From Octopus sinensis (Eukaryota), in the NCBI RefSeq assembly GCF_006345805.1, contig NC_043001.1, positions 86,366,001-86,430,000 of the forward strand: DNA of 64,000 nucleotides, in the 5' to 3' direction. This document shows, piece after piece, positions 6,741 through 52,665 of the stretch. Both the position numbers and the translations under genes were made by a program. Numbering within the stretch: position 1 is the stretch's first letter; each line of letters starts with the position of its first letter. The notes below the pieces were generated by a model. It was given only the letters and a program-made list of their open reading frames with translations. It had not been told where the DNA came from and ran no database searches.

Positions 6741-6772
6741 ATTATTATTATCATCATTATTATTACTATTAT
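6660..6772. repeat. (ATT)n microsatellite
   Basis: Trinucleotide run; it explains the poly-Leu ORF. Confidence 0.95.
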
Positions 6773-8487: not shown

Positions 8488-8754
8488 ATGTTAATGTTTA
8501 TGGTTACATGAAAAGGGCGTCAAACATTAACTGCTTAGAAACTCTTAACAGAATACGTATAAGGACTTCTGCATATGTAGATGAAATTATTCTTGAGCCA
8601 CAAAGCCCGACTGATGTCCCCAAACTGAAAGTATTCGAAGTGACACCTACATTTTCAATGACAGTATTCCAGTACAAAAGTATGAACGATGAGACATCTT
8701 TATCTGTGCATTTCAATATACTTGGCAAGATTGTTCAAGCGGGAGGAATTTTAG
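8488..8754 (+). CDS. ITIH-like gene A exon, ITI-HC C-terminal domain (DVNVYGYMKRAS...KIVQAGGIL)
   Basis: Acceptor tattccacag, donor gtaagt, 267 nt open frame, phase 1-1. VNVYG resembles VVNG and GGILG resembles HGLLG of ITIH. Confidence 0.75.
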
Positions 8755-8966
8755 GTAAGTAATATATATTTTCTAAAAACGAAATATTATTTTGAAGCAT
8801 TAAGATTAAGACTTAGCTGTGTGGCAAGAAGCTTACTTCGTAATTACTTGGTTCGTGGGGGAGGGGGTCGGAATAGACACAAGATAAAGATATAAAAGTA
8901 CATAACCACCAGGTATTCAACTTATATTTTCATTCATGTTTCCTCTCTATTTGCATCCACATTTAG

Positions 8967-9101
<135 letters not shown>

Positions 9102-9219
9102 TATCTTAAATTAATCGTCAAAAACTTATTAAGAGAATGAGTTTATGTTTAATTAAATCCAAGAACTATTGTCTTGTAAAAATATATTTTGTTGACACGT
9201 TTTTTTTTATTTATTTCAG

Positions 9220-9353
9220 GTGCTTATGTAAACGAATTCCATTGCATTGAAATACCCCCAAATCATATGGTGTTGTCTGGTGAAGCAGGGTTATATCATA
9301 AAGTCAGTTACCATACCGGTAGTGGAAGTTTATCCCATTGTTTTACGATATGA
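9220..9353 (+). CDS. ITIH-like gene A terminal coding exon (GAYVNEFHCIEIPPNHMVLSGEAGLYHKVSYHTGSGSLSHCFTI*)
   Basis: Acceptor tttatttcag, phase 1, open to TGA at 9351-9353; continues GGILG in frame. Confidence 0.7.
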
Positions 9354-20971: not shown

Positions 20972-21049
20972 ATGGCTCCGCGCTTGTTATTTGTAATGTT
21001 CGGTGCTGTATATTATTTGGGGATAACAGCCAATGGAGAAACTGTTCAA
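20972..21049 (+). CDS. ITIH: ITIH-like gene B exon 1, signal peptide (MAPRLLFVMFGAVYYLGITANGETVQ)
   Basis: AAAATGG start context, hydrophobic leader, donor gtaagt, phase 0. Confidence 0.7.
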
Positions 21050-21391: not shown

Positions 21392-22739
21392 CGAGAAAGT
21401 ACCCAAAACCGGAAATTTTGCGATATTATTTTATTCACTCAGTTTTACATATTTACACATTTATCACCTTCTCCATTTGAAGCAATGCATCGGTCCAGAT
21501 GCGTTTTCGACTGTTCGAAGCAATCCTAGAACTCTTGCGAAGTGATGCCTTTTAACGCCTCGGTCGTTTTTTCTGTTTTTTTTTTTATTCACCTCTTCCA
21601 CATCTGCAAAACGTTTTCCTTTAAAGATTTCTTTCATTCAGGGAAACAAAAAAGTTGCAAGAAGCAAGATCGGGTGAATAGGAAGGGTGGGTTAGCGGGG
21701 TCATGCTATTTTTGGTCAAAAACTGTCACATACTCAAAACGGTGTGCGAAGATGCATTGTCGTGATGAAACCACCACTCTCCACTTTGCCATTAGTTGCG
21801 GAGTTTTCGTCTCGCCGTGTCTCGCAAGCGCTTCAGAACTGCCAATTAAAACATCTGGTTAACAGTTTGACCAGGAAGAACAAATGCTGTGTGGCCAATT
21901 CCTTTCGCGTCGACGAAACAAATCAGCATCGTCTTGACATTGGACTTCACTTGACACGATTTTTGGGAGCGTGGTGATATTGAATGCTCCCGTTGACTTG
22001 ATAGCTGCTTTGTTTCTGGGTCGTAGCCGTAGCACCAGCTTTCGTCACCACTGATTACCTTAGAAAGGTTCGGATCAGCTTCCAACTGTTCTTTCAGTTC
22101 GCGACATGCATTCAGTTGTGAATGTTTTTGATCTTCCGTGAGCAAGTGAGAGACAAATTTTGCTGCAACTCTTTTTATTCTCAGTTCGCCACTCAAAATT
22201 CGTCGGCAGGAGTTTCAGGACACACCAGTCATATCAACAAGTTTGTCAGTTGTTCGGTGACATTTCCCCAAGATAAATTCATGGATTTTCGTGATGTTTT
22301 CATTCTTTGACGGTCACCTTGAACGAGGTTGGTCTTCAAGCGACAAGTGACCTTTACTAAAGTGTGAAAAACACTCTAAAACGAGGTTGGTCTTCAAGCG
22401 ACAAGTGACCTTTACTAAAGTGTGAAAAACACTCTTAAACTTGTGTTTTGCTTATGGCAGTGTCCTTGTAAGCTGTTTGTAGCATAAGAACTGTTTCGGC
22501 GACCGGATTTCACGGAAGCACGCTGTTCCTTCGCTTCAGCCATCGCAAAAGTCGACGAACAGGGGAGAAGCATTACAAAACAAAAACTCACCACATGGTA
22601 GTACGAGTCCACCTAATGACGCCGGTCGGCATGACTGATGCCTGAGAGTCGCATCAAGTGGCCTCTAGCCGTGGAGGCCTGAACTACAACGGGTTTATAT
22701 CGCAGAGAACCTTTCCGATTACTTTTTCGTACCCCGTCG
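21392..22739 (-). mobile_element. Mariner element, degenerate near-full length
   Basis: RVAAKFVSHLLT, GDESWCYGYDPETKQ and KTMLICF motifs; TA-CGA termini; internal 58-bp tandem duplication at 22322-22438. Confidence 0.9.
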
Positions 22740-25966: not shown

Positions 25967-26353
25967 TGTCGTGATGAAACCACCACTCTCCACTTTGCCA
26001 TTAGTTGCGGAGTTTTCGTCTCGCCGTGTCTCGCAAGCGCTTCAGAACTGCCAATTAAAACATCTGGTTAACGGTTTGACCAGGAAGAACAAATGCTGTG
26101 TGGCCAATTCCTTTCGCGTCAACGAAACAAATCAGCATCGTCTTGTCATTGGACTTCACTTGACACAATTTTGGGGAGCGTGGTGATATTGAATGCTCCC
26201 GTTGACTTGATAGCTGCTTCGTTTCTGGGTCGTAACCGTAGCACCAGCTTTCGTCACCACTGATTACCTTAGAAAGGTTCGGATCAGCTTCCAACTGTTC
26301 TTTCAGTTCACGACATGCATTCGGTTGTGAATGCTTTTGATCTTCCGTGAGCA
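25967..26353 (-). mobile_element. Internal mariner fragment, near-identical to 21758-22144
   Basis: Direct sequence match over 387 bp. Confidence 0.9.
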
Positions 26354-26583
26354 TATGTATGCCTATTGTTAAACATAGATAATATACCGGTAGTATAATG
26401 GAACTTCCTTCCTTAACTGTTCTGTCAGTTCACGACTGCATTCCGTGTGTGAATGCTTTTGATCTTCCGTGAGCATATGTATGCCTATTGTTAAACATAG
26501 ATAATATACCGGTAGTATAATGGATACTTCCTTCCCTTAGATGTTTATTTTAACTTCAATCTCAGCAAACCATATATATATAT

Positions 26584-27920: not shown

Positions 27921-28556
27921 TTAACAAAAAGACATGATATATATAATATAATATAATATAATATAATATAGAATGTATATATCTTTTAATAAGCTTACGG
28001 GATAATCGTAACACCAGCGCCTGTTCAGGCACTGTTATTCAACATATCGTTAGTGGGAAGATGAGTCATTGCTGTCTCTAGCGTTCGAGTGTCAATCATT
28101 GACGAGAGGAAGGAATGTTGAAATCATGTGACCTGGTAGTCTCGGTGCTAGAGATGGCGGAGATCTATCTCCTCGCAAGCGATATAAACAAGAGCGCATT
28201 TCGGCCCAAAAGCCAATATGAAAGTTTCTCTCATAGTATCTACCGCAACATAGTTTGTTCTAAGAATATCCACAATTAAAATTGGGATGTATATATATAT
28301 ATACATATACATATATATATATATATCTATATATATATATATATATATATATAGATATATATATATATATATATACAGGAAAAGTAAGTTGTTCTTTTTT
28401 CAAATACATAAGTAGACGTTATCCGATTTAGACCTAAATGCAGTTTGAAGTGTGCATAGTTATAGTTATTGCATCAAATTGTGACAGTCAACTCTGAGTC
28501 TTGCGCTTCTCATTTGGTCATGATACTTGTGACCTAGACAGACAGACAAATAGACT

Positions 28557-28652
<96 letters not shown>

Positions 28653-29171
28653 CCGTAAATCCTCGAGTATAGTCCGCCCTTGGGTATAATACGCAGGGGA
28701 TTTTTAGGGGGCTGTACTTCTGAAAATCTAAACCTTGTGTATAATACGCACCACTCCTCTAACTTGAGTCGTGCGTAATTAAGCCAGCAGCACCTAGTCG
28801 AAAAAACACTTCCGCGCGTGCGTATTAGAATAATGGTGATGTTCTTAACTGTTATATGGGAATGTAAATATGTTTGCAAATTATTTTTGTTACATGTTAT
28901 TCTGTTCTGAATACTTTTATTTTAATAAATGTTGCTTACTGCAAGTTATGGATGATTCTTTTATGACTTCATTGCTTTCAGGCTTAGCTTAAGGTATTTT
29001 CGCGCCTGACATCACAAAATGCGCCTGAATAAACATTGCCGGTCAGCAAATAGAGACTCGGACATTGCTTAGTATATATTTTTTCCTTTTTAACCTCGTA
29101 TATACTACGCACTAGGGATTTTGACCTTTAAATTTTAGGGGGAAATGCGGATTATACTCGAGGATTTACGG
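28653..29171. mobile_element. pogo/Tigger-like MITE, 519 bp, inserted in (GATA)n
   Basis: 25-bp TIRs CCGTAAATCCTCGAGTATA(G/A)TCCGC with TA duplication at 28651-28652 and 29172-29173. Confidence 0.85.
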
Positions 29172-29241
<70 letters not shown>

Positions 29242-29309
29242 CATACATACATACATACATACATACATACATACATACATACATACATACATACATACAT
29301 ACATACATA

Positions 29310-29529
29310 CGAGAGGGTGCTGAAAAGTTTCTGGATTTGAGAAAAAGAAAATACAGGAGGATCAGTTAATTATGATTTTATTCAACATATCCTTCTCCCA
29401 GGTTCACGCACTCATTGCAGCGGTCCCTCAGTTTTTCTAAGCCCTGTGAAAGAACTCGGAGATCTGAGCCTCCAACCAGGCCTTTCGCGACACATCCTTA
29501 AAGTCAGGAACTGTTCAGCACCCCCACGT
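29310..29529. mobile_element. Short mariner-derived MITE
   Basis: Imperfect TIRs GGGTGCTGAAAAGTT.CTG / CAGGAACTGTTCAGCACCC next to CATA and TA repeats. Confidence 0.65.
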
Positions 29530-30551: not shown

Positions 30552-31035
30552 TACCTATTTCTTTACAACCCACAAGGGGCTAAACACAGAGAGGACAAAT
30601 AGGGACAGACAAACGGATTAAGTCGATTATATCGACCCCAGTGCGCAACTGGTACTTACTTAATCGACCCCGAAATGATGAAAGGCAAAGTCGACCTTGG
30701 CCGAATTTGAACTCAGACGAAATACCAATTTCTTTACTACCCACAAGGGGCTAAACACAGAGAGGACAAACAAGGACAGACAAATGGATTAAGTCGATTA
30801 TATCGACCCCAGTGCGTAAATGGTGCTTATTTAATCGACCCCAAAGGGATGAAAGGCAAATTCGACCTCGACGGAATTTGAACTCAGAACGTAGCGGCAA
30901 ACGAAATACCTATTTCATTACTACCCACGAAGGACTAAACACAGAGAGGACAAACAAGGACAGACAAACGGATTAAGTCGATTTTATCGACCCCAGTGCA
31001 TAACTGGTATTTATTTAACCGACCCCGAAAGGATA
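30552..31035 (-). mobile_element. SINE family Y, three head-to-tail partial units
   Basis: Units start TTTCTTTACTACCCACAAGGGG at about 30557, 30729 and 30913. Confidence 0.8.
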
Positions 31036-31421
31036 ATTGCCATCATATTATCTTGACTTACTTCAAATAGAAGTTAAATTTTCTTTAGCTTGCAATTTGT
31101 CAAGTTGAAAGAAAGGACTCTTTGGATTATGCATTTTCAGATAGACCTAACCAGATTGAATGGTCCTACCTAGAACTCCTCAAAACATAGGTCAACTCGT
31201 GAAAGGGATCATGTAGAAATAAACTTTTGAAATACATACACCATAACATTTGTCTGTTTTTTAAATGCCCGAATAGTATTAAATCTGACAATCTTAGAAG
31301 TTATTACTTATCATGTAAACAAAACTCTCTTTTGGAAAATATTTTAATTGCTATATACAGGTTAACATTAAATAAAAATCTATTGAAGTGAATTACGATA
31401 TTCTTGAATTTATATTTTCAG

Positions 31422-31579
31422 AAAGCAAACCTGAAATCACTTCATATAATCAGTAATATTACATATAGAATTGCTACCACTTTAGTTTCCATGAAATATT
31501 ATAACCCGTACAATTCTACAGTCGGCGCAGACTTATACATAACGATGCCTCTTAATTCAATTATATTGAATTTTTCTAT
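31422..31579 (+). CDS. ITIH: Gene B exon 2a, VIT domain (KANLKSLHIISNITYRIATTLVSMKYYNPYNSTVGADLYITMPLNSIILNFS)
   Basis: Acceptor tatattttcag, donor gtaagt, 158 nt, phase 0-2. Confidence 0.85.
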
Positions 31580-31849
31580 GTAAGTAAAGTTCATTTTTCA
31601 CGATATATACTTCTTGCCTAACCTACTTAGAAAATGAAGTTCTTTAGAATAAGATACCAAATAAATCGGACTGTATTATGTATGAAATTTTAGAAGTCAC
31701 TGAATATATTATGATGTTCAAGTAATGACCCAACGATTTGTAAAAAATATGTATAATATTGAAATTACAGCAATTTAGACGGCTATGTGAAGCTGGTAAC
31801 GTCTATGTGAAACTGTGACTAATACCTGGCTGCATGGGATTGCTACTGA

Positions 31850-32301
31850 AAGGTCACATGTGTAACAGCAGGATTCGTCTCCTTGCAATACCTCAGGAAT
31901 GAATCAGACGTGGTTGTCGAAAAATCTCTACGACTTCAACAGCTCCAATTGCTGGTATCTTAATTCCTCCAATCGCAATAACATGGATTACAATGTGTAT
32001 GCTACGGTTCAGAAAAGCACCAAATACTCTGCTTCCAACATTAACAGGGAGCTGGTGGCCAAGAGCAAAGAGATGTTCGTAGGTCCTCCTAGCGACACTG
32101 TGAGGAATGCATGCACCAGATTCCGGGGCTGCCTTGAGGCCGTGCTGGAAACCGAGGGTGGCTTTTTTCAGTAAACTGTGATCTGACAGCCATAATCTAG
32201 TTGATATGTTTTCACTTTTCAAAATATATTTGTTTTTGGATAGAGTATTGTGTTTCCCTTTCCTTTGGTACGGACTGTCAAATTCAACCAGAGCACTCTG
32301 T
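31850..32301 (+). mobile_element. Tc1/mariner transposase 3' fragment and right TIR
   Basis: QDSSPC.TS...Q.WL...MDY.VY...VRNACTRFRGCLEAVLETEGGFFQ*; ends ...GCACTCTG-TA. Confidence 0.75.
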
Positions 32302-32358
32302 AATTTTTTTAATTTTTCAATGTTAATTATTTTTATTGAATTTTATTTTCGATTGCAG

Positions 32359-32469
32359 GGAAATTGATGGACATGTGACTATTGGAGACGAAATGAAAAA
32401 ATCACTTGCTAAAGATACTTACGAAAAGAACGTAGGAAAAGGAAAAAGTTCTGGCTATTTTGAAGTCGA
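32359..32469 (+). CDS. ITIH: Gene B exon 3a, VIT (MEIDGHVTIGDEMKKSLAKDTYEKNVGKGKSSGYFEV)
   Basis: Acceptor gattgcag, donor gtaatt, 111 nt, phase 2-2; IDG...G...K..AK..YE....GK.G motif. Confidence 0.85.
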
Positions 32470-32570
32470 GTAATTTTATATTTTCCCAACTATTTGATAT
32501 TTCTTGCAATTAGTATATTAATAACAACATCCCCAAAATATTTCAATTATTATTTTTTATCATTTTCCAG

Positions 32571-32821
32571 ACACCGCTTCACAAATGTCTTTGATATATC
32601 TGTTAATGTTGAACCACAAAAGTATATAGTTTACAACTTGACTTACCAAGAACTTCTGACACGACAGAACAATAAATACAGGCACGACGTTCATGTGACC
32701 AGTGGTGAAATTATTGATGACTTTTTAGTTGAAGTTTTCATTACTGAACCACAAGATATTATTCACGTGTCTGTACCAAAAATTACAGATAATAAATTAA
32801 CGGATATTACCGTTGACAAAG
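32571..32821 (+). CDS. ITIH: Gene B exon 4a (HRFTNVFDISVNVEPQ...LTYQELLTRQ...DFLVEVFITEPQDI...VDK)
   Basis: Acceptor cattttccag, donor gttggc, 251 nt, phase 2-1; F..SVNV.P....Y.LTYQELL.R motif. Confidence 0.9.
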
Positions 32822-33159
32822 GTTGGCAAATCATTTATGATTGGTTTTTCTCTATATTTTCATTTTTCATTATCGTCATAAACTTCATTTAACCACTGCT
32901 TTTAGATACTTCACAAAGTAGGTGCACTTCAAAAATACAGAAGCTATTCCTGATAATAAAAACTTTCCTGTAGCGATTTTTTTTAATGCTGGGTTGAATC
33001 TAAGCATTTCTTTAGGCAGTAAACAAAGATGTAATAAAAGTCAATAGAAGCAGAAATATAAGAAATATAAGAAATATAAGAAAACTACGTTAATAATAAA
33101 AAGACTGGTCACATTTCAAGTTCTATATTTGTACAACATGCTACAAAGATCCACATATA

Positions 33160-33667
33160 CGAGGGGCGTTCAATAAGTAATGCCCCTGACCCACTTCCAT
33201 AGCAGTAGGGCAACGAAACTTGGCACAGTAATTAGTCTTTTTCTACATAGAAACCACCCAGAGTTACGCATTTCTCCCATCGTTTGATGCAGCTCTCGAG
33301 ACCGTTTTTGTAGAAGACCCCAGCTTGGTCCTCCATTCACGATGTGACTTCAGAAATCAAGGCTGCATCATCTGGGAAACGCTTTCCTTTCAAAAACAAC
33401 TTCATGGCTGGAAAGAGGTGAAAATCAGAGGTGCAAAGTCAGGAGAGTAGGGGGATGGGGGAGGAGTTCATAGCCGCACGCTTGTGCTTCTAATCTGGCG
33501 ACACGCGAGTTGTGAACCGGAGCGTTGTCCTGCAGGAGGAGGATGCCTTTGCTGATCTTGCCCCGCCTCTTGATTTTGATAGCTTCTCTTAATTTCCTCA
33601 AGAGTGAAGCATAATAGGCTCCTGTAATTGTGGTACCCTTTGCCAGGAAATCTGTCATCACTACTCG
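33160..33667 (-). mobile_element. Mariner 3' half, well preserved, present only in duplicate module A
   Basis: TITGAYYASLLRKLREAIKIKRRGK..LLQDNAPVH..ELLPHPP; TA-CGAGGGGCGTTCAATAAGTAATG TIR; the paralogous site near 41608 is empty. Confidence 0.9.
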
Positions 33668-34856
33668 TAAGAACAGAAGGTGGAAAATTGAAAAAAACGA
33701 TAGGCTTACTCTCAAAGGATTAGATTTGGTAAACATCCAACAACATTGCTAAAGATAACAGAAATGTACGATATACAGATGACAAATTATACAAGATTAT
33801 ATTACTTTCTTCATTATTATTAATACTTATAAGAAGTAATATAAAGCTACTGTTATCAATAAATTGTCTACAAATTAATCTTCATTCTCCGATAAAGAAC
33901 ACACTTCACATCAAAATGGTACAAATGTCATTTCGTTTGCAATTTACTAATATTACGTCTCTGAGATAATACTTTGACTCTTCCTAAAGATGATATGATT
34001 CTACAATATAATGTCCAAGTGCCCACTCTTGTACTAGTGTCTCCTTCTCCAAGTAGAATTACACTGCGCTGCAGTAAACATTTCACTGTTCTGCAACAAG
34101 CATTATATTTTCCCATATATCAAGTGTTATCTATCCTCCAGTTAACAGTCCGTTACTATACAAATATCAAATTAAATGCTATACTACCTCTTGTTATGGC
34201 ACGCTCTTGTTAAACATACTCTTGATAACCACTCTCATTACATAACTACACTGGTTATCACTTATTAAGATTGCCCTTGACATACAAAACAGTACGCTAC
34301 AGTAAATTCCAAACTTAATTGTTCACATTCTGGTAGTAAGCTTTTTGATTCCTCACTATATACGTTAATAGTCAAGAAAGAATAAAAGAAAATTTCGGAA
34401 GGTACAATGATACCCTACATTCAACTGGTGTCTCAAACGGAAGTGGTTACGACATCCAAGGAATTCTAGACTCTGGGAAAATTTGAACACCCAACAGGTG
34501 CTATTTACAATGCAAACAGTAGCACGAAATAGAGAGAAAAGAGGGGTATCCTTGGTGTACCCGGTTCCTTAGACTTTCAGGAATCATACGAAATACTTGC
34601 ATAAGAGAAGGTTCTTGTTCTCTGAAGACCTTCAGCTATTCAGCTCCCTCCCACCCGCCAGAGATTCTTCCTACACTGTTGTATAATAGATACCATTCAG
34701 TAATCATTCTTTGCTATCTCATCATGTTGCACATTCTCTTATTACTAACTAAAACTAGTAGTAAGATGTCATACACTGACAACATTACTCGCCCAAGGTA
34801 AACATTTAATTCTGCCGCTGATCACGTTGCATTATCACACAGTAAATATGACACTG

Positions 34857-35128
34857 TGGAGGCGCGTGGCTTAGTGGTTAGGGTGACAGCATCATGATCG
34901 TAAGATTGTGGTTTCGATTCCTGGACCGAGCGACGCGTTGTGTACTTGAGCAAACCACTTCATTTCACGTTGCTCCAGTCCACTCAGCTGGTAAAAATGA
35001 GTAACGCTGTGATTGACCGGCGACCCGTCCAGCTGGGGAACACATACGCCATTGAAACCGGGAAACCGGGCCCATGAGCCTGGCTAGGCTTTAAAAGGGC
35101 GCATTTATTATCATTATTATTATTATTT
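34857..35128 (+). mobile_element. SINE family Z with (TTA)n tail and 12-bp TSD
   Basis: AATATGACACTG at 34845-34856 and 35129-35140; single copy at the paralogous empty site 42774-42785. Confidence 0.9.
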
Positions 35129-35275
35129 AATATGACACTGATTCACAGTCAACGTTAAATTATTAATCAAGCCTTTTAAATTATACCTCTTTGGGTTTGA
35201 AGATATTGAAATAACAGGTATTCATTCAAGTCTGTTATAGATATAAATTAAGTTATTGTTAATGATTTTCAATAG

Positions 35276-35439
35276 AGCTGGATTCTGCTTTAATTAAGAA
35301 CATCAGCAGTAGAGAAATTTACATCAAATACAACCCAAGTCGTAAACAACAAGAAGAAATATCAGAGAAAGATGGCGCTGCACGTTTTCTCAGAGTGGAA
35401 TATGACGTGGATCGTCAATATATTTCAAATTCACTATAT
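35276..35439 (+). CDS. ITIH: Gene B exon 5a (ELDSALIKNISSREIYIKYNPSRKQQ...LRVEYDVDRQYISNSLY)
   Basis: Acceptor ttttcaatag, donor gtaagt, 164 nt, phase 1-0; Y.P...QQ and V.YDV.R motifs. Confidence 0.85.
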
Positions 35440-35512
35440 GTAAGTTATTGTTTTACATCAAATTCCCATCTTGCCATTTAAAAGTGATTATAATACTATA
35501 ATTATATGTTAT

Positions 35513-35567
<55 letters not shown>

Positions 35568-35735
35568 TGCGTGTATCTGTGTTTATGTGTGAACGTGTAT
35601 CACATTCATTTCTTCAATACATCATTATTTTTCATCTTCATATATTGTTTACACATTGTTTATTCTTATTCTTTCACTTTCTATTTGCCTCTTTTTCTCT
35701 CTCCCTCTCTCTATTTCTCCCTTTCTCTCTGTCTG

Positions 35736-35780
<45 letters not shown>

Positions 35781-36549
35781 GCCCGTCTCTCTCTATCTCG
35801 CTATCTCTCTCGTTCACTTTCATCTTCGCTTTTGAGTGTGTGCGCAATTCCATATTTCTATGTACGTTGGAATGTATTTTGTGTGTTTTTGTTACATATC
35901 CTTATATACATACACGCGGATATTTATGCACAACTATATTGCTGAGACCGAACTCTGCCTTTTGCACAGTCTGGATCGATGAGATGGGCATCAGTCAGCC
36001 ACCAGAGTTGATTCGAAAGGCAAAACCCACTAAACTTTTGTTCTCAGGCATATGTAATTTTGGACTGTTGTTATGTATTTTACTTCTCAGATCTCTCGAC
36101 ATTACTTGCTCCGGTTAATTCTGTGAAAGCGGGCAGCTTTTTTCAAGTACCTCAAAGGGTCTCTCAGGGTCATTTTAAAATTAACTCTCTCGATGGAATA
36201 GGAAGTATTATTAGATTTTTATCTGCGTATTGCAACTTGCTTTTTTAAAAGATTATTTATTTCCAGACAATAAGTTTTCAAACCCAGTACCCATCCCTTA
36301 TTAATAACTGAGATTATTAATTTTGCATAGTATTTTACAATTAGTATACTGTTTAAAATATTCATTAAGTATTCTCCCCTGATTATCTCAGCATTGTTTA
36401 ACAAAGGAAGCCTTTCCGCCATATTTCCTTGATCTGCTTGGGATAGTAGCTAAATTATCTTTAAATCACACTCTGGGGTCTTGAAGAAAAGGAATACATT
36501 CAATCATGCATTCCTAGATACACTTAACAAGACTGAATTGTCCTGGGTG

Positions 36550-37068
36550 GAACGTCTCTAAACATTGGTCAGCACGTGCCAGAGATCTTGTAGAGCTCAG
36601 CATTAACAAGTTTGTTCCTTCTCGAGCCATGTCTGGCTCATAAGTGCCGGTTTCCCCCGTTCCATTGGTGTATAGATTCCCCACCTGGACGGGACGCCGG
36701 TCCGTCGCAGGTGAGCTGCAAGAGGAAAGAGTGAGAGAAAGCTGTGGCGAAAGAGTCAGCAGAAGTTCGCCATTACCTTCTGCCGGAGCCGCGTGGAGCT
36801 TAGGTGTTTCGCTCATAAACACACACACATCGCCCGGTCTGAGATTCGAACCCGCGAAGTACTAGGATTACATGGCCGCAGTCAAATTTAACACTGTATT
36901 TCTAATATTCTTAGCGCTCTAGTTATAAAGAATTATGCTTACATGTTTTGGGGGGTTTCTTTTTTCATGTAAATAAAATGTTCCATTTGGAAAGCAGTTT
37001 ATATACTTACTCTCGACCGCGAGTCCGCTGCTCTAACCACTAGGCCATGTGCCTCCACAGCATTAGCA
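36550..37068 (-). mobile_element. SINE family W, split by a 154-bp insertion
   Basis: Reverse complement of 45200-45500; interrupted at 36858-37011. Confidence 0.8.
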
Positions 37069-37435
37069 AGCATTAACAAGTCCATATATATGAATATTAA
37101 TAGTCTCTGGTTCTTTGTAGTCACCATGAGCTCTCATTGAAAGCTAATGTAATCGCTATTGATTTTATACTCATCAAAATAGAAAACTTGTAAGGAGCGT
37201 AATAAATACTTGCATTTCCTGTGGGTGGCTAAATTTTGAAATGTTTATGCTATAAAGTTCATCTTTGTTTTTCAAGTGCCTGAATAGTATTAAATATGAT
37301 CATCTTAGAAGTTTATTACTTATCACCTAAACAAAATTGATTTTATAGATTTTTTTTTTTGATTGCCACATAAAGCTTAACAGTAAATAAAGCTCTATTT
37401 AAGTGATTTACGATATTTCTTGGATTTTTTTTCAG

Positions 37436-37593
37436 AAAGCAACCCTGAAATCCATTCATGTAATCAGCGATATTAAATATCGATTTGCTACCACTCTGGT
37501 TTCCATGAAATATTATAACCCGCACAATTCTTCAGTCACCGCAGACTTAAACCTACTGATGCCCCGTAATTCATTTATATCCAATTTCTCTAT
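37436..37593 (+). CDS. ITIH: Gene B exon 2b, duplicated VIT exon (KATLKSIHVISDIKYRFATTLVSMKYYNPHNSSVTADLNLLMPRNSFISNFS)
   Basis: Acceptor tttttttcag, donor gtaggt, 158 nt, phase 0-2; paralog of exon 2a. Confidence 0.9.
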
Positions 37594-37787
37594 GTAGGTA
37601 TAATTCATTTTTCACAACATATATTTCTAGTCTACCCTACTGCTGTTTCCTTTTTAACCCAAGCTCGCGAAGTTCTCTTAGTATAAGTTATCGAATACAG
37701 CGGACCATTTCATGTATGAATTTTTGGAAGTCATTGATTATATTAAGATGTTTGGTTAATGACCCAACGATTTGAAAAAAATATACA

Positions 37788-38172
<385 letters not shown>

Positions 38173-40469
38173 TTTAACACTGTATTTCTAATATTCTTAG
38201 CACTCTAGTTATAAAGAATTATGCTTACATGTTTTTTTGTGAGGGGGGGGTTCATGTAAACATTTTCCGTTTGGAAAGCAGTTTGTATACTTTACTGACC
38301 TGTTTTACAAGTAAGTGCCAACACTTTGCGAAGATTAATAAGTTTCATCCTCAGGCGGATCTCGTGAAGGTGAAGAGTAAAGGAGAACATGTCGGCAGGA
38401 AACTAGGAGAAGGAAGCTGTTCTGCAAAGGAAAATGTAATCAAAGTATCATACGTCAGAGAGAATCTTGAGTTTTTTTATCTAGCTATTAGTACCCGCTA
38501 GAAATTAAGAATAAATCACAGCTGTGTGTGGCAAAAATAGAAGAATGACATCACAGAGCGCGGTATACGCTTTCTGTGAGCTTAGATAAAATACAGTCGT
38601 TAACTGATCAGGACAGACAGTTTTATGAAAATTATTTTTGACTGAAAACTCGATCCGTCTGAAACTGCTAAGCGATTGATTAAAGCATTATTCTTTGTAT
38701 ATCCTTTCATATTCCCACACACAACTAAACCCATAAATACAAACCATCCGAGTAGCTGGTGCGCAGTTGTGGAAGCACAGCTTACAATATCTAAAATTAA
38801 GCGTTCATTTAGAAGTGTCTGTTCAAGCATTTCTACGCCTGCAAAACAATAAAGATTTAAAGGGGACACACTGTACAGATTGCAAATTTCCACTCCTCCC
38901 AACCTGCAACAGTACCTTTAAAACAAAACATTATATCGTTTACCTGTTCTGTTTCTGGCTCAATACTGCTCACACACACACACAAACACACGTACACACA
39001 CACATGCATAATTAATCATATTCAAATCATGTTTTTAACTTAGATTACCAATCCTTAAAATTTTATAAAGTCAACCCCACTGATGAAAAGGGTGTCCGTT
39101 CATTTATTCTTAAATCTTCAGCTTCTGAGACAGCTTAACAATTTCTTCTCTCTTTCTGTCTCTCGATAAAAATATACCTTTATTTAAACGTTCTAGAATA
39201 GACGATGCTAACCTTTGCATCACATACAGAAATCGCTGCACATGGCCCACAGCTGTTTTTTGACATTTTAAGGAGAATTGTAAATTGTTAAGGTATTTAG
39301 AAAGCCTTGATATTTTTAATGTTCCACATTAGTTATATCATTGTTCTAGAATAAGCCACAAGCAGAGCATACCCACTCAACTTGCCGATTACTTACCTAC
39401 AAGTATCTCAGAAGTAACAGAAGACCAGATAAGCAATGAGACCATTAGGAGCAAAAGATCTATCAGATGTTTGCTCTCCAACTTCATCTGCTATTGGTCT
39501 ATCGCGTTCGAGAATCCCGTTGAAAACATGATTGTTGCATTGCCTTCAGCAAAGCTTCTCATCGTGAATGCCATTAAAGTCTCTTGACTAAGCTACTTAT
39601 ACTTGACGTCCATCCCTCTCTAGCATCTTGGTTATGAAGATCATTTGAAGATCTACTTTCTAACTATAAATGTTAGCATCACTCTCATACTATTGATTTT
39701 ATACTTTAACGAGCTACTTCCGTTTCCCACACTCATACCATCCCGTCCATAAGAAAACCATATTTCTATACAAATGTTGCTCCTGTTTATTTTTTTTATT
39801 TTTTATTTTTTGCTATTTATGACAACACACAATTGAATACCAGACACATCAAGCGTACCATGATTTAGAAAGCTCTTATATCTTAGGAAACTGCCTCATG
39901 AATATTTGATTAAACGCATAACATTGAAAACGAAACTTTCTGCTGAAACACTTTATCAAAATACTTTGTTAATTAGTTTATCAAAATATTTTGTTAATTA
40001 GTTTTTAAATCTAGTCTTAATGCAATAGTCTTGTGAGTTTATTTGATTGTTACATACAAACATTTGTAACACAATGAAACAATTTCAAATACATTCAAAC
40101 TTCTGAAATACTGGATGTTCGGGAAAACTTTGACGACTTCTTATGTTTACTTTCGTCAAGAACAGTTTGGTGAACAGCCAACAGCGTTAGAAATTAAAGT
40201 TGTAGCTGGGAAAATGTTAGCTGATACAGGATTTGAAGGCATATGGATACTGGAAAATAGTTACTTGTATTCTAATGATTCACACTAGTTATCAAAATGT
40301 CGAAATCATGACTGCAGCCCAATGGTCTGCGAACAGTGTAAAAGTTGTAAGATATGACATGACAATCATGAAAACCAAGATCCCCCAAATTGTGATGTGT
40401 CTTCAGTGAGGGTGACATCATGCGAACCTATATTTTGGAAAAGAGCTTTAGACTCAATTTAGACGTCTA

Positions 40470-40672
40470 TGTGAAACTGTGGTTAATACCTGGCTGCATA
40501 GGATTGCTACTGAAAGGTCACATGTGTAACAGCAGGATTAGTCTCCTCGACATACCTCAAGAATGAATCAGACGTGGTTGTCGAAAAATCTCTACGACTT
40601 CAACAGCTCCAATTTCTGGTATCTTAATTCCTCCAATCGCAATAACATGGATTACAATGTGTATGCTACGGT
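40470..40672 (+). mobile_element. Truncated paralog of the Tc1-like fragment at 31800-32010
   Basis: Near-identical sequence ending at GCTACGGT; it was carried along by the module duplication. Confidence 0.75.
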
Positions 40673-40867
40673 ACTGTTAATTATTTTTATTGAATTTTAT
40701 TTTCGATTGCAGGGAAACTGATGGACATGTGACTGTTGGAGAAGTAAAGGAAACTTCAACAGCTCCAATTTCTGGTATCTTAATTCCTCCAATCGCAATA
40801 ACATGGATTACACATGTGTATGCTACGGTACTGTTAATTTTTTTATGAAATTTATTCGATTTGGCAG

Positions 40868-40978
40868 GGAAACTGATGGACATGTGACTGTTGGAGAAGT
40901 AAAGGAAAAATCACTTGCTAAAGATATTTACGAATATACCAGGGAAACAGGACAAAGTTCAGCCTCTGTTGAAGTCGG
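40868..40978 (+). CDS. ITIH: Gene B exon 3b (METDGHVTVGEVKEKSLAKDIYEYTRETGQSSASVEV)
   Basis: Acceptor atttggcag, donor gtaatt, 111 nt, phase 2-2. Confidence 0.85.
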
Positions 40979-41069
40979 GTAATTTTATATTTTCCCAACT
41001 ATTTGATATTTCCTGTAGTTTTGGAATATCTCCAAAATATTTCAATTATTATTTTTTATCGCTTTCCAG

Positions 41070-41320
41070 ACACCGCTTCACAAATGTCTTTGATATATCT
41101 GTTAATGTTGAACCACAAAAGTATATAGTTTACAACTTGACTTACCAAGAACTTCTGACACGACAGAACAATAAATACAGGCACGCCGTTCATGTGACCA
41201 ATGGTGAAATTATTGATGACTTTTTAGTTGAAGTTTTCATTACTGAACCACAAGATATTATTCACGTGTCTGTACCAAAAATTACAGATAATAAATTAAC
41301 GGATATTGCTGTTGACAAAG
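41070..41320 (+). CDS. ITIH: Gene B exon 4b
   Basis: Acceptor gctttccag, donor gttggc, 251 nt; 4 nt differences from exon 4a. Confidence 0.9.
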
Positions 41321-42921
41321 GTTGGCAAATCATTTATGATTGGTTTTTCTCTATATTTTCATTTTTCATTATCGTCATAAACTTCATTTAACCACTGCTT
41401 TTATATAATTCACAAAGTAGGTGCACTTCAAAAATACAGAAGCTATTCCTGAAAATATTTTTATTTTTAATGCTGGGTTGAATCTAAGCATTTCTTTAGG
41501 CAGTAAATAACGATGATATAAACATCAACAGAAGTAGACGTGCAACAGTCACTAGTCTTATATCAAGTTCTATACTTGTACAACATACTACAAAGAACCA
41601 CATATAGAAATAGACGGTGGAGAATTAACAGCAAGGATATAAGGCATACTGTCGACGTATTAGAATTGATAATCATTCAACTTCATTGCTAAGGGTAACA
41701 GATAAGTATGATATGCCTATGACAGCCTATATGAAACATGAGGCAACTTTTTCTGATTATTGCTCATAGGTAGTACTATAGAGATGCAGTTATCAATGGT
41801 GTAAAAATGTATCTTTATTCTTGTAGAAATAAAATAAAATTCATTTAGAATAATGATGCATATCGGAATCGTACGTCATTTCGTTTACAATTTGCTAATA
41901 TTATAATGTCTCTGGGTTAACATTTGGTCTCTTCCTAAAGATGATATCATTCTACAATATAATGTCCAAGTGCCCACTCTTGTACAAGTGTCTCCTTCTC
42001 CAAGTAGAATTACACTGCGCTGCAGTAAACATTTCACTGTTCTGCAACAAGCATTATATTTTCCCATATATCAAGTGTTATCGATCCTCCAGTTAACAGT
42101 CCGTTACTATTCAAATATCAAATTAAATGTTATACTACCTCTTGTTATGGCACGCTCTTGTTAAACATACTCTTGATAACCACTCTCATTACATAACTAC
42201 ACTGGTTATCACTTATTAAGATTGCCCTTGACATACAAAACAGTACGCTACAGTAAATTCCAAACTTAATTGTTCACATTCTGGTAGTAAGCTTAAGGAT
42301 TCCTCACTATATACATTAATAGTCAAGAAAGAATAAAAGAAAATTTCGGAAGGTACAATAATACCCTACGTTCAACTGGTGCCTCAAACGGAAGTGGTTA
42401 CGACAAGCAAGGAATTCTAGCCTCTGGGTGGTCTTAAAGATCTAGGAGGTACTAGTTACAATACAAACAGTAGCACGAAGTAGAGTATAAGAGGGGTATC
42501 CTGGGTGTGGCCGGTTCCTTGGACTTTCAGGAATTATGAGACGAAATACTTACAAATGAGAAGGTACTTGTTCCCTGAAGACCTTCAGCTATTCAGCTCT
42601 TCACCTAGAGTTTTTTACTACACTATCATAAAATAGATATTGTGCTGTAAACAGTTTATACCATCTCACCATCAAATGTTACGCAGTCCCTTATTGCTGA
42701 CTAACTAAACTTACCCAGCCACAGTAAACATTATTTAATTCTGCCGCTGTTCACTTAACATTATCCAACAGTAAATATGACACTGATTCGCAGTCAACAT
42801 TAGATAGTCCATCAAGTCGTTTAAATTATATCTCATCAGGTTAGATGATATTGAAATAACAGGTATTTATTCAACTCTGTTATCGATATTCAAATTAAGA
42901 TATTGTTTGTTTTTAAAACAG

Positions 42922-43082
42922 AGCTGGATTCTGCTTTAATTACGAACATCAGCAGTAGAGAGGTTTACATCAAATACAACCCAAGTCGTAAACAACAAGA
43001 AGAAATAAAGAAAGATGGCGTTGCAGGTTTACTCAGAGTGGAATATGACGTGGATCGTCAAAATAATTCAAATTTGATATAC
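42922..43082 (+). CDS. ITIH: Gene B exon 5b (ELDSALITNISSREVYIKYNPSRKQQEEIKKDGVAGLLRVEYDVDRQNNSNLIY)
   Basis: Acceptor tttttaaaacag, donor gtaagt, 161 nt, phase 1-0. Confidence 0.9.
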
Positions 43083-43208
43083 GTAAGTCATTGTTTTACA
43101 TCAAATTCTCATCTTGTCATTTAAAAGGGAATGTTATACTATAATCTTATCTTATATAAATGTGTGTGTGCGCGTCTGTGTGTGTGTATGTTAATCACCA
43201 TTTAAAAT

Positions 43209-45199: not shown

Positions 45200-45500
45200 G
45201 AGGCACATAGCCTAGTGGTTAGAGCAGCGGACTGGAGGTCGAGGGATCACGGGTTCGAATTTCAGACCGGGCGATGTGTGTGTTTATGAGCGAAACACCT
45301 AAACTCCACGCAGCTCCGGCAGAAGGTAATGGCGAACTTCTGCTGACTCTTTCGCCACAACTTTTTCTCACTCTTTCCTCCTGCATCTTGCAGCTCACCT
45401 GCCACGGACCGGCGTCCCATTCCGGTGGGGAACCTATACGCCAAGGAAACCGAGAAACCGGCCCTATGAGCTAGTCATGGCTTGAGAAGGAACAAACAAC
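45200..45500 (+). mobile_element. SINE family W, full length
   Basis: GTGGAGGCACATAGCCTAGTGGTTAGAGCAGCGGACT...GGGTTCGAAT tRNA-like head; AACAAAC tail. Confidence 0.85.
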
Positions 45501-46531: not shown

Positions 46532-46820
46532 GCAGTTGATGGCTTCTTTGTACACTTCTTCACTCCTGATTCCTTACCAAGTCTTTCAAAGCACATCGTA
46601 TTTATGCTTGATGTCAGTGCATCAATGTCTGGTCGTAAAATTGAACAAATGAGCGAAGCTATGGAAAACATCCTTGATCAACTCGACCCAGAACTTGATA
46701 AATTTCTCATCGGTAAATTCAGTAGTGGCGTTTCGTGGATGAAGGACGAGTTTTTAATAGCAAACAATCTTAACAAAAATTTAGGCAAACATTACATTAA
46801 GAATCTTCAAGCCACTGGAA
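46532..46820 (+). CDS. ITIH: Gene B exon 6, start of vWA (AVDGFFVHFFTP...KHIVFMLDVSASMSGRKIEQ...LQATG)
   Basis: Acceptor aattcgtag, donor gtaagt, 289 nt, phase 0-1; DxSxS MIDAS motif. Confidence 0.92.
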
Positions 46821-47302: not shown

Positions 47303-47515
47303 TACTCTAGGCACAAAGCCCCAAATTTTTTTTGTGGGGGGGGGGGCAGTCGATTAGATCGACCCCAGTACGCATCTAGTACTTAATTTATTGACTCCGA
47401 AAGGATGAAAGGCAAAGTCGACATCGACGAAATTTGAACCCAGAACGTAGTTACGGGCGAAATACTGCTAAGCATTCCGTCCAGCGTGGTAACAACTCTG
47501 CCATCTCGCCACCTT
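47303..47515 (-). mobile_element. SINE family Y
   Basis: Same core as 17887-18119. Confidence 0.75.
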
Positions 47516-47634
47516 CTACACTCTAAATATTGAATTAACTTTTATTCAGAATGTTAAAATGTAAGGTCACTATTTGACAATGGTCCTTCACGTCCCTATT
47601 TTAAAGCTCTTATTACTAAGTACTACAGTCCTAA

Positions 47635-47722
<88 letters not shown>

Positions 47723-48250
47723 GAGTGAGAGAGCAGTGACACTGGAGTAAAATATACGAAGCCCAGTATACCCGTCATGACTACTCGTCTGATAAGGGTA
47801 CACTAGGCACATGCATCACAATCATATGTGTTTGACATGGTGATCTCATATCAAGATAAACAGCACATTATCTTGCAGGTGGGGCCCAGTTATAATTTCT
47901 TCTGGTCGAGTAACCAATCCTGCACAAAATGTTCCTGAATAAGAGTTGTTTAAGGATGTTGAATGATACACCCATGTTTCCAGAGTTGAATTAATCCAAC
48001 GCCAAAGAATCCCTCTCAACACATGGCTATGATGCTCCCCAACTACTTCTGCTCATGATCAGAGGTGCACATATCGTCAGCCACTAAGGGACATGCTCAA
48101 CTGGTTAGGGTCAAACAAATGACAAGCAAATCTGTGGTATTCAGCAGAATATTTACTGTAGCCCGTCTTTTATACAAAACAATGTACATGATAACACTTC
48201 CAATCAGTTAAGATCAGAAGACACGAGAGCCACTGCCTGGTACTGCATCA
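47723..48250. mobile_element. Unclassified interspersed repeat of about 530 bp embedded in (ATT)n
   Basis: (ATT)n flanks at 47633-47722 and 48251-48322; a diverged inverted copy lies at about 61715-62035. Confidence 0.7.
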
Positions 48251-48552: not shown

Positions 48553-49238
48553 GTACAAACATTAATGCTGCTCTCCTTCAAAGTGTAGAGAAACATAAAG
48601 CAACTTCAACCCCTACGAAGAAAAGTATTATCGTATTTCTTACTAACGGATATCCAACAGAAGGAGTCACAAAACTCAAAGAAATCAAGAAAAATTTCAG
48701 AGAAGTCAACGAAGAGATTTCATTATTCACCCTTTGTTTCGGAAGAAAATCTATCAATAATTTTTTTCGTGAGCTTGCCACAGAAAACGGAGGATTTAAT
48801 AGGAGGATCTACGCAGACTCTGACAGTAAACTTCAAATTGAAAATTTTTATAAAGAAATATCTAACATTTTATTAAAGGATATTACGTTTGTTTACTTGG
48901 ATGGTGTTGTTAATACTAGTTCTACATCATTTAGCAACTACTTCAAAGGATCAGAATCGGTTGTTTCCGGTGTTTTGCCGCAGAATAATCACTCAACCAT
49001 AAATGTGAATTTAACAATGACAAACCACTTGGGGCCAACTATGGAAAATTTGGAGCTAGAATTATATAGAGATGACTTTACTTCAGATGATGGTTTTTCG
49101 CAAAATTACAGTTTGACTAGTATTCAGTCATTTTCTGAAATTACTGAAAAGACTTATGCTTATCTCACTTTGAGACAACTTCTTATAGAAGACAAAACAA
49201 ATGAAGTGCGTTATGACATTCTTAATTTAGCTCTAAAG
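48553..49238 (+). CDS. ITIH: Gene B exon 7, vWA and following region (STNINAALL...IIVFLTNGYPTEG...ENGGFNRRIYADSD...TEKTYAYLTLRQLL...LNLALK)
   Basis: Acceptor ttgtctcag, donor gtgagt, 686 nt open frame, phase 1-0. Confidence 0.92.
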
Positions 49239-52592: not shown

Positions 52593-52665
52593 TATAATTT
52601 CGTAACTCCATTAACATCAATGGTTGTTACCAAATACAATGTGAACGAGGAACTCTTTGAGAAAG
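52593..52665 (+). CDS. ITIH: Gene B exon 8 (YNFVTPLTSMVVTKYNVNEELFEK)
   Basis: Acceptor ttgttttcacag, donor gtaatt, 73 nt, phase 0-1; canonical ITIH Y.FVTPLTSMVV. Confidence 0.92.

What the first reader, a model, noticed from the sequence alone, without database searches (positions are those of the whole stretch)
31422..43082. Frame-preserving tandem duplication of the four-exon VIT module
Exons 2-5 occur twice (31422-35439 and 37436-43082), followed by a single vWA region. Each module starts and ends in phase 0 (684 and 681 nt), and all eight exons are open with GT-AG sites. No second signal-peptide exon was found between them. The gene can therefore encode a double-VIT ITIH, or use the modules as mutually exclusive four-exon cassettes. 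Classical ITIHs have one VIT before the vWA domain.
Basis: partly seen in the sequence, partly recalled or inferred. Interest (0 to 1): 0.75.

Follow-up and report, generated by a model that had tools for sequence, protein, structure and literature searches.

The report
Duplicated VIT exon block in octopus ITIH-like gene
An octopus gene for a secreted ITIH-like protein carries a real, in-frame tandem copy of the four exons that encode its N-terminal VIT domain; the same duplication is in Octopus bimaculoides and is already annotated there as a double-VIT protein, so it is a modest, undescribed variant rather than a new kind of system.

Summary
Exons 2-5 occur twice (684 and 681 nt), all eight are open with AG/GT sites, both blocks are phase 0-0, there is one vWA region, and no signal-peptide exon lies between them. 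Introns are duplicated too (79-96% identity), so this is a genomic segmental duplication.

It is not an artefact. The orthologous O. bimaculoides locus has the same A and B modules, and RefSeq XP_052823892.1 already joins them as VIT-VIT-vWA.

Both modules behave as coding sequence. Orthologous introns carry about 18.7 indel events per kb, so about 12.8 are expected in 684 nt. Module A has none, and module B has only in-frame ones. Both pass Pfam VIT and keep 29-30 of 32 near-invariant family positions.

Evolution is asymmetric. Module A lineages show 40 nonsynonymous to 5 synonymous changes (omega about 2), module B about 0.6, and the ancestral branch about 0.3. Exon 4 is homogenised within each species by gene conversion.

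No transcript data were reachable, so tandem inclusion versus alternative cassette use stays untested. I favour tandem inclusion. The proteins lack the DPHF site, so they are ITIH-like rather than classical heavy chains.

Interest is modest.

The parts
20972..21049 (+). Exon 1: start codon plus hydrophobic signal-peptide-like leader (26 codons). Ends in phase 0 before GTAAGT.
   Evidence: Translation and splice site. 96% identical to residues 1-26 of O. bimaculoides P0121.
31255..35548 (+). Duplicated genomic unit, copy A (exons 2A-5A with their introns and about 167 nt of upstream intron).
   Evidence: blastn of the A region against the B region, 79-96% identity. Orthologous to O. bimaculoides L001 16946-21327 at 88-92%.
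31422..31579 (+). Exon 2A (158 nt): start of VIT module A, with the motif YRIATT instead of the canonical YRFATT.
32359..32469 (+). Exon 3A (111 nt).
32571..32821 (+). Exon 4A (251 nt): 98.4% identical to exon 4B, homogenised by gene conversion.
35276..35439 (+). Exon 5A (164 nt): ends in phase 0 before GTAAGT.
35440..37435 (+). Inter-module intron. No exon-1 copy and no signal-peptide exon. Contains (GT)n and CT-rich microsatellites and a SINE-like insert.
37266..43191 (+). Duplicated genomic unit, copy B (exons 2B-5B with their introns).
   Evidence: Orthologous to O. bimaculoides L001 22541-29230 at 87-90%.
37436..37593 (+). Exon 2B (158 nt): canonical YRFATT and FISNFSM motifs.
40596..40910 (+). 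Local tandem duplication of about 157 bp (40596-40753 and 40753-40910). It copies the 3' end of intron 2B plus the first 41 nt of exon 3B. This creates an upstream decoy acceptor at 40713 that reads into a stop codon if used.
40868..40978 (+). Exon 3B (111 nt).
41070..41320 (+). Exon 4B (251 nt).
42922..43082 (+). Exon 5B (161 nt; one in-frame 3-nt deletion relative to A). Ends in phase 0 before GTAAGT.
46532..46820 (+). Exon 6: AVDGFFVHFF strands and the start of the vWA domain, with the MIDAS motif DVSAS.
48553..49238 (+). Exon 7: the rest of the vWA domain and following strands (228 codons).
52593..52665 (+). Exon 8: YNFVTPLTSMVVTK, the C-terminal strand region that completes the N-terminal beta-sandwich in human HC1. 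Later exons lie beyond the window end.
   Evidence: PMC7170535
36652..36827 (.). Left arm of an inverted SINE-like repeat pair that brackets module B.
   Evidence: 95% complementary over 114 nt. Absent from the O. bimaculoides ortholog.
45275..45457 (.). Right arm of the same inverted repeat pair, in intron 5B.

Best explanation
An intragenic tandem segmental duplication copied a block of four exons inside one member of the octopus ITIH-like gene cluster. The block runs from about 50-170 nt upstream of exon 2 to at least 500 nt downstream of exon 5. It encodes the whole region before the vWA domain: the VIT domain plus linker, equivalent to residues 45-265 of human HC1.

Shown:
- The block starts and ends in phase 0 and its length is a multiple of three, so the copy is frame-neutral.
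- The duplication predates the split between the window's species and O. bimaculoides.
- Both copies have since been kept as coding sequence.
- Copy A evolves fast at the amino-acid level but keeps the fold-defining residues.
- Exon 4 is repeatedly homogenised between the copies by gene conversion.

Inferred:
- All splice sites are ordinary and conserved, and nothing enforces exclusion. The default product is therefore a secreted protein ordered signal peptide, VIT-A, VIT-B, vWA, C-terminal region.
- Copy B, next to the vWA domain, keeps the canonical structural role.
- Copy A is an extra N-terminal beta-sandwich that is free to diversify, perhaps as a ligand-binding surface.
For: Duplication and exon anatomy.

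Same arrangement elsewhere:
- The orthologous O. bimaculoides locus L001 has the same architecture with A-type and B-type modules.
- Site patterns in exons 2 and 3 are orthologous (19 sites against 2), so the duplication is older than the species split.
- RefSeq XP_052823892.1 (1050 aa) and the older UPI00071D27BA (890 aa) join both modules. No A-only or B-only protein is in the 5.8-billion-protein collection.

Frame selection:
- Orthologous introns differ at 0.087 substitutions per site and carry 18.7 indel events per kb.
- That gives 12.8 indels expected in 684 nt. None is seen in module A (P about 3e-6; P = 0.04 even at a four-fold lower rate). Module B has only 3-nt-multiple indels.
- All 16 splice dinucleotides are intact in both species.

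Fold retention:
- Both modules pass Pfam VIT.
- Module A keeps 29 of 32 and module B 30 of 32 family-wide invariant or near-invariant positions, like a single-VIT paralog.
- AlphaFold2 gives module A the same strand order as module B. pLDDT is 62-87 for A against 85-95 for B. The model matches human HC1 (6FPY) with TM 0.75 over about 590 columns.

Asymmetric evolution: A lineages 40N:5S, B lineages 24N:11S, ancestral/outgroup branch 28N:27S. Fisher tests give A against the ancestral branch P = 7e-5 and A against B P = 0.046.

Gene conversion: exon 4 has 8 concerted and 0 orthologous informative sites.

No second first exon lies between the modules. No conserved docking/selector complementarity was found.
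Against: - No RNA or peptide evidence could be reached, so tandem inclusion is inferred, not shown. I could not see whether RNA-seq supports the RefSeq model.
- Omega on module A is not distinguishable from 1 (P = 0.07 for omega above 1). At the amino-acid level, relaxed constraint cannot be separated from positive selection.
- In human HC1 the N-terminal region forms one 16-stranded sandwich together with C-terminal residues 601-652 (PMC7170535). Only one of two modules can be completed in cis, which would fit single-module isoforms better.
- In the window's species module B carries a decoy acceptor at 40713 and is bracketed by an inverted repeat. Either could lower productive inclusion of B.
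- The pLDDT of module A is depressed partly because the alignment covers it only shallowly.
Confidence: 0.6

Rival explanations
1. The two blocks are alternative cassettes, either mutually exclusive or optional. Transcripts carry A or B, or in-frame A/B chimeras joined at homologous exon borders (31579>40868, 32469>41070, 32821>42922). Each protein then has the canonical single VIT, and the gene yields several variants of the ligand-binding sandwich.
For: - Every such combination is in frame, because phases are identical in A and B and both blocks are 0-0.
- The canonical fold needs one N-terminal module per set of C-terminal strands.
- Module A keeps the fold-defining residues while diversifying elsewhere, as alternative exons often do.
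- In the window's species an inverted repeat brackets module B and could loop it out.
Against: - No feature enforces exclusion. The inter-module intron is about 2 kb, all sites are U2-type GT-AG, and including both or neither block does not shift the frame, so NMD cannot police it.
- No conserved docking/selector complementarity was found.
- The inverted repeat is not conserved in O. bimaculoides.
- No A-only or B-only protein model exists in the public collection, whereas the double model does.
Confidence: 0.27
2. One block, most likely A, is a dead pseudo-exon set that is never spliced in or is not translated. Its open frame is a leftover of a fairly recent duplication.
For: - Omega on the A lineages is at or above 1 (40N:5S).
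- Absence of stop codons alone is only weakly informative. P is about 0.1-0.26 for 28-45 random substitutions.
- Module A has lost canonical motifs (RFA to RIA, FISNFSM to IILNFSM).
Against: - There are zero indels in 684 nt across two species, where about 10-13 are expected at the local intron rate.
- Exon divergence (6.9%) is below intron divergence (8.7%).
- All splice sites are intact in both species.
- 29 of 32 family-conserved positions are kept.
- Module A passes Pfam VIT at 68 bits.
Confidence: 0.07
3. The duplication is an assembly artefact (uncollapsed haplotypes or a mis-join), or module B starts an independent gene.
For: Tandem repeats of a few kb are a common type of assembly error. 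The gene sits in a cluster of similar paralogs.
Against: - The copies differ by 5-20% with many indels, far above allelic divergence.
- The same A and B copies, each with its own diagnostic substitutions, are in an independently assembled genome of another species.
- There is no exon 1, promoter-region copy or signal-peptide exon upstream of 2B.
Confidence: 0.02

Closest known systems
[quoted passage not shown]
   Same: It is the ortholog. Exon structure and the VIT-A / VIT-B / vWA order are the same. Amino-acid identity is 86-89%, orthologous introns are 88-93% identical, and the neighbouring ITIH-like paralogs match.
   Different: It lacks the 157-bp decoy duplication at exon 3B and the inverted repeat around module B. 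Module B is 687 nt rather than 681. It is an automated model, and no paper in the searchable library discusses its double VIT.
Vertebrate ITIH heavy chains (human HC1, PDB 6FPY; ITIH4, 9C4F)
   Same: Both have a VIT-containing N-terminal sandwich, a vWA domain with a DxSxS MIDAS motif, and the C-terminal YxFVTPLTSMVV strand. phmmer gives E = 6e-88 to ITIH4, and Foldseek gives TM 0.75 to HC1.
   Different: They have one VIT module, not two. They also have the DPHF cleavage and transfer site and PF06668, which all cephalopod members examined lack.
Single-VIT octopod paralogs in the same tandem cluster (P0002, P0003, P0004, P0015 and others)
   Same: The four-exon VIT block has the same phases, and identity is 73-78%. 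They serve as the outgroup and as a donor for gene conversion.
   Different: They have one block per gene and stronger purifying selection (N:S 28:27 on the outgroup/ancestral branch).
Other multi-VIT gene models among the 150 best representative clusters
   Same: Partial VIT repeats sit ahead of a vWA domain in a fish model (ROI16303.1, Anabarilius grahami) and an ostracod model (CAG0912490.1).
   Different: Those are partial fragments in unverified automated models. All other multi-stretch hits are VIT-vWA-VIT-vWA, that is, fused tandem genes. Only the octopus protein has two complete VIT modules before one vWA domain.
Clusters of mutually exclusive exons arising from tandem exon duplication (for example Dscam-type; from general knowledge)
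   Same: The exons are tandemly duplicated, frame-compatible and diverging.
   Different: Here the unit is four exons. Joint inclusion keeps the frame, and no conserved competing RNA pairing was found.

Membership tests
[quoted passage not shown] | N-terminal VIT domain (PF08487) | tested here: met
   Module A scores 68.2 bits and module B 78.3 bits against a cut-off of 26.5. There are two stretches in P0121. The domain is present twice, which is atypical.
[quoted passage not shown] | vWA domain with a MIDAS DxSxS motif directly after the VIT region | tested here: met
   PF00092 scores 64.7 bits. The motif is DVSAS in the window and DISAS in the ortholog.
[quoted passage not shown] | C-terminal ITI_HC_C domain (PF06668) with the DPHF cleavage and chondroitin-sulfate transfer site | tested here: not met
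   The C-terminal exons lie outside the window. In the full-length ortholog P0121 there is no PF06668 hit at E <= 0.01 and no DPHF. The motif is absent from all 11 cephalopod-group sequences checked (P0121 and P0001-P0010) and present in the bivalve and fish ITIHs. The gene should therefore be filed as ITIH-like, not as a bona fide heavy chain.
[quoted passage not shown] | Overall HC1-type fold (sandwich + hybrid + vWA) | tested here: met
   The AlphaFold2 model has pLDDT 83. Foldseek to 6FPY_A gives E = 8.5e-52 and TM (target-normalised) 0.75 over 591 columns. About 230 residues, one module, are extra.
[quoted passage not shown] | Secretion signal | not tested
   A hydrophobic leader MAPRLLFVMFGAVYYLGITANG is visible in exon 1. 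No signal-peptide predictor was available.
Mutually exclusive exon cluster | A mechanism that forbids joint inclusion (frame shift plus NMD, steric hindrance from a short intron, U2/U12 incompatibility, or conserved docking/selector RNA pairing) | tested here: not met
   Joint inclusion is in frame, the inter-module intron is 1996 nt, and all sites are GT-AG. No pairing of 10 nt or more is conserved in both species, apart from one 11-nt AT-rich match. This was a crude test.
Mutually exclusive exon cluster | Transcripts contain exactly one of the alternatives | not testable with these tools
   No RNA-seq or Iso-Seq access. The protein collection holds only the double-module models.

The most novel reading that the evidence does not exclude
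The A and B blocks form a combinatorial splicing system: A only, B only, A+B, and three in-frame A/B chimeras. It would diversify the vWA-independent ligand-binding sandwich of a secreted, immune-type ITIH-like protein. Module A would be under positive selection, and exon 4 would be kept uniform by gene conversion because it forms the shared structural core. This would be a multi-exon domain-cassette analogue of the diversification of invertebrate recognition molecules.
Probability: 0.1. Interest if true: 0.6.

Novelty: new variant of a known kind. Interest (0 to 1): 0.35.

Why it matters
If the double-VIT protein is made, it is a clean natural example of domain gain by duplication of a symmetric-phase exon block. 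One copy stays canonical. The other diversifies quickly while staying in frame, and part of the pair evolves in concert.

It also poses a structural question. In human HC1 the N-terminal region needs C-terminal strands to complete its sandwich, so how a second copy folds or pairs is not obvious. In HC1, binding of vitronectin, fibronectin and TGF-beta LAP does not need the vWA domain (PMC7170535). A duplicated, fast-evolving N-terminal module could therefore change ligand range.

The significance is local to cephalopod ITIH-like gene family evolution. It does not open a long-standing question, and the architecture is already present, though uncommented, in public annotation.

Tried and rejected
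- **Transcript evidence through the protein collection.** No Logan-derived or other A-only, B-only or double fragments exist besides the O. bimaculoides models. P0001 itself is not on any recorded contig. No RNA-level conclusion was possible.
- **Identifying the window's species or an annotated product.** No protein at or above 90% identity is in the collection. The O. sinensis (L003) and O. vulgaris (L004) loci I could fetch are single-VIT paralogs, not the ortholog. P0003 is not on record.
- **Hidden first exon between the modules.** Only microsatellite matches were found. Rejected.
- **Assembly artefact.** Rejected because the duplication is conserved across species.
- **Dscam-style docking/selector pairing.** Nothing is conserved, but the test was crude.
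- **Literature.** No paper on double or tandem VIT domains was found. The only octopus ITIH mention is peptides of paralogs in an ink proteome.
- **Pfam scan of the multi-stretch hits.** The call exceeded the size limit. A local phmmer run replaced it.
- **AlphaFold2 output.** The tool gives confidence and secondary structure but no coordinates. I could not see which module pairs with the C-terminal strands. I ran no further search on an A-only construct because its result would not separate the hypotheses.
Full report
**What is in the window**

The window is AT-rich (35% GC), intron-rich animal DNA full of microsatellites and transposon remnants. On the + strand it carries most of one ITIH-like gene.
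- Exon 1 is at 20972-21049. It holds the start codon and a hydrophobic leader.
- Two four-exon blocks follow.
- Then come exon 6 (46532-46820), exon 7 (48553-49238) and exon 8 (52593-52665).
- The remaining C-terminal exons lie beyond the window end, judging from the orthologous locus.
- The C-terminal exons of the upstream paralog are at 3796-9350.

**Check of the observation**

I re-derived every boundary.
- Block A is 31422-31579, 32359-32469, 32571-32821 and 35276-35439, total 684 nt.
- Block B is 37436-37593, 40868-40978, 41070-41320 and 42922-43082, total 681 nt.
- All eight exons are open and flanked by AG and GT. Internal phases are the same in A and B, and both blocks begin and end in phase 0.
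- The similarity is genomic, not only exonic. 31255-35548 aligns with 37266-43191 through the introns at 79-96% identity.
- There is one vWA region.
- There is no exon-1 copy or signal-peptide exon between the blocks.
- Each block passes Pfam VIT on its own: 68 bits for A and 78 bits for B.

**It is real and shared with another species**

A protein search found one hit covering the whole double-VIT query. This is UPI00071D27BA, whose cluster also holds RefSeq XP_052823892.1 of Octopus bimaculoides, 1050 aa.

The encoding locus (L001) has the same layout: exon 1, four A exons, four B exons, then the vWA exons. It has the same splice sites and ITIH-like neighbours on both sides. Orthologous introns are 88-93% identical. 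Each window block is closer to its O. bimaculoides counterpart than to the other block.

In exons 2 and 3 the informative sites follow orthology, (wA,bA)|(wB,bB), at 19 sites against 2. The duplication therefore predates the species split and cannot be an assembly artefact.

**Are both blocks coding?**

Between the two species, orthologous introns of this gene differ at 0.087 substitutions per site and carry 18.7 indel events per kb. At that rate 684 nt should have collected about 12.8 indels.
- Block A has none. P is about 3e-6, and still 0.04 if exon-like sequence had a four-fold lower indel rate.
- Block B has only indels that are multiples of three.
- Block A exons differ at 6.9%, below the intron value.
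- All splice dinucleotides are intact in both species.
- Lack of stop codons alone is weak evidence (P about 0.1-0.26).
- At 32 positions that are invariant or nearly so across 86 family members, A keeps 29 and B keeps 30. A single-VIT paralog keeps 29.

I conclude that both blocks are translated in at least some transcripts. The pseudo-exon reading is unlikely.

**How the copies evolve**

I used the single-VIT paralog P0002 (locus L002, same four-exon structure) as outgroup and polarised the changes.

| Branch | Nonsynonymous : synonymous |
|---|---|
| Stem of A | 18:2 |
| All A lineages | 40:5 (omega about 2) |
| B lineages | 24:11 (omega about 0.6) |
| Ancestral/outgroup branch | 28:27 (omega about 0.3) |

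A differs from the ancestral pattern (Fisher P = 7e-5) and marginally from B (P = 0.046). It is not significantly above neutrality (P = 0.07).

A has also changed canonical motifs: RFA to RIA, and FISNFSM to IILNFSM or VILNFSM. The rest of the gene has omega about 0.55 between the species. So A is the divergent copy. It is either under relaxed constraint or being diversified, but only by substitutions that respect the frame and the fold core.

Exon 4 behaves differently. It has 8 concerted and 0 orthologous informative sites. It differs at only 4-5 positions within a species against 9-17 between species. The concerted signal fades in the flanking introns. Shared derived changes exist in both species. 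Gene conversion between the blocks has therefore continued in both lineages.

The first 87 nt of window exon 2B are identical to exon 2 of a different paralog in O. vulgaris. This suggests conversion between genes of the cluster as well.

**Structure**

In human HC1, residues 45-265 together with C-terminal residues 601-652 form one 16-stranded sandwich. The vWA domain is inserted in a small hybrid domain formed by residues 266-287 and 478-543 (PMC7170535).

The duplicated block corresponds almost exactly to the 45-265 segment. Exon 6 starts with the hybrid-domain strands (AVDGFFVHFF). The block is thus a natural structural unit, but one that is normally completed by C-terminal strands, here exon 8 (YNFVTPLTSMVV).

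AlphaFold2 on the 830 residues encoded in the window gave the following.
- Mean pLDDT is 83 and pTM is 0.65.
- Both blocks have the same order of strands and helices.
- pLDDT is 85-95 for B and 62-87 for A. The alignment covers A only shallowly.
- The A-B junction (residues 247-252) has low confidence.

The model matches 6FPY with TM 0.75 over about 590 columns. That is one block plus the vWA and C-terminal part, leaving one block extra. I could not obtain coordinates to see which block receives the C-terminal strands.

**Tandem product or alternative cassettes?**

Nothing in the sequence enforces exclusion.
- The inter-module intron is about 2 kb.
- All sites are ordinary GT-AG.
- Including both or neither block keeps the frame.
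- A crude search found no conserved docking/selector complementarity.
- Public annotation contains only the double form.

I therefore favour constitutive inclusion, giving VIT-A, VIT-B, vWA.

The alternative is not excluded. A-only, B-only and three A/B chimeric joins are all in frame, and the fold argument favours one block per molecule. In the window's species block B also has two lineage-specific hazards.
- A 157-bp tandem duplication places a better-looking decoy acceptor at 40713. It reads into a stop codon if used.
- An inverted SINE-like pair (36652-36827 and 45275-45457, 95% complementary over 114 nt) brackets the block.

Neither feature is in O. bimaculoides. Only RNA data can decide.

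**Comparison with what is known**

The closest relative is the O. bimaculoides ortholog, an automated model. No paper in the searchable library discusses its double VIT.

I searched one block against 1.84 billion cluster representatives. Among the best 150, only this octopus protein has two complete VIT modules before one vWA domain. Other multi-match proteins are VIT-vWA-VIT-vWA fusions. Two unverified models (a fish and an ostracod) have partial VIT repeats.

Family membership is partial.
- VIT, vWA with MIDAS, and the HC1-type fold are all met.
- The defining C-terminal DPHF transfer site and PF06668 are absent from the ortholog and from all 11 cephalopod-group sequences checked (P0121 and P0001-P0010). 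They are present in bivalve and fish ITIHs.
- 'ITIH-like VIT-vWA protein' is the accurate label.

**Verdict**

It is conserved, under frame selection, asymmetric in its evolution, and partly homogenised by gene conversion. It is a new variant of a known kind, already visible in public annotation, with the key functional question (which transcripts are made) still open. Interest is modest (0.35).

Noticed in passing
window 3796-3918, 8490-8756, 9213-9350 (+): C-terminal exons of a second, upstream ITIH-like gene (up to 94% identical to O. bimaculoides P0003 over short stretches). The window lies inside a tandem cluster of ITIH-like paralogs, as in O. bimaculoides chromosome CM046605.1.
   Followed up: partly
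window 40596-40910 (+): A recent tandem duplication of about 157 bp copies the end of intron 2B plus the first 41 nt of exon 3B. The upstream copy keeps the ancestral acceptor context (decoy acceptor at 40713) and reads into a stop codon if used. It is not present in O. bimaculoides.
   Followed up: partly
window 36652-36827 and 45275-45457: An inverted SINE-like repeat pair (95% complementary over 114 nt, about 250 nt in all) brackets module B. Both arms lie in window stretches with no alignable counterpart at the O. bimaculoides locus. It could loop out module B in the pre-mRNA or form double-stranded RNA.
   Followed up: partly
window 37436-37593 (exon 2B) vs L004 19851-20008: Exon 2B differs at 9 of 158 nt from exon 2 of a different paralog in O. 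vulgaris (P0015), and the first 87 nt are identical. It differs at 18 nt from its own ortholog in O. bimaculoides. Gene conversion between paralogous genes is likely, and the source species is probably close to O. vulgaris.
   Followed up: partly
window 32571-32821 and 41070-41320; L001 18944-19194 and 27098-27348: Exon 4 of the two modules evolves in concert within each species (8 concerted and 0 orthologous informative sites), unlike exons 2 and 3. The tract fades in the flanking introns.
   Followed up: yes
P0121 and the other cephalopod-group ITIH-like proteins checked (P0001-P0010): All lack the DPHF cleavage and transfer motif and the PF06668 domain that bivalve and fish ITIHs have. The cephalopod family probably cannot be coupled to chondroitin sulfate in the classical way.
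   Followed up: partly
window 21846-22196 (-), 26055-26354 (-), 33425-33736 (-): Mariner-type transposase remnants. The 33425-33736 fragment passes the Pfam PF01359 cut-off (33.7 bits against 24). The 21846-22196 fragment scores below it (20.6 bits). The 26055-26354 fragment was not scanned and is called by its similarity to the 21846-22196 one. They lie in introns 1 and 4A, and the two in intron 1 are near-identical copies.
   Followed up: partly
window 30556-30910 and 47348-47515; L001 16469-16695 and 25382-25615: A short interspersed repeat sits just upstream of exon 2A in both species, but the window + strand matches the O. bimaculoides - strand. Further copies lie in other introns of the gene.
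   Followed up: no
window 47574-47812; 35506-35590; 28466-29310: There is a long trinucleotide run (translates as poly-L, poly-N or poly-I) in intron 6, a (GT)n run directly after exon 5A, and TCTA/TATG-type microsatellite arrays in intron 1.
   Followed up: no
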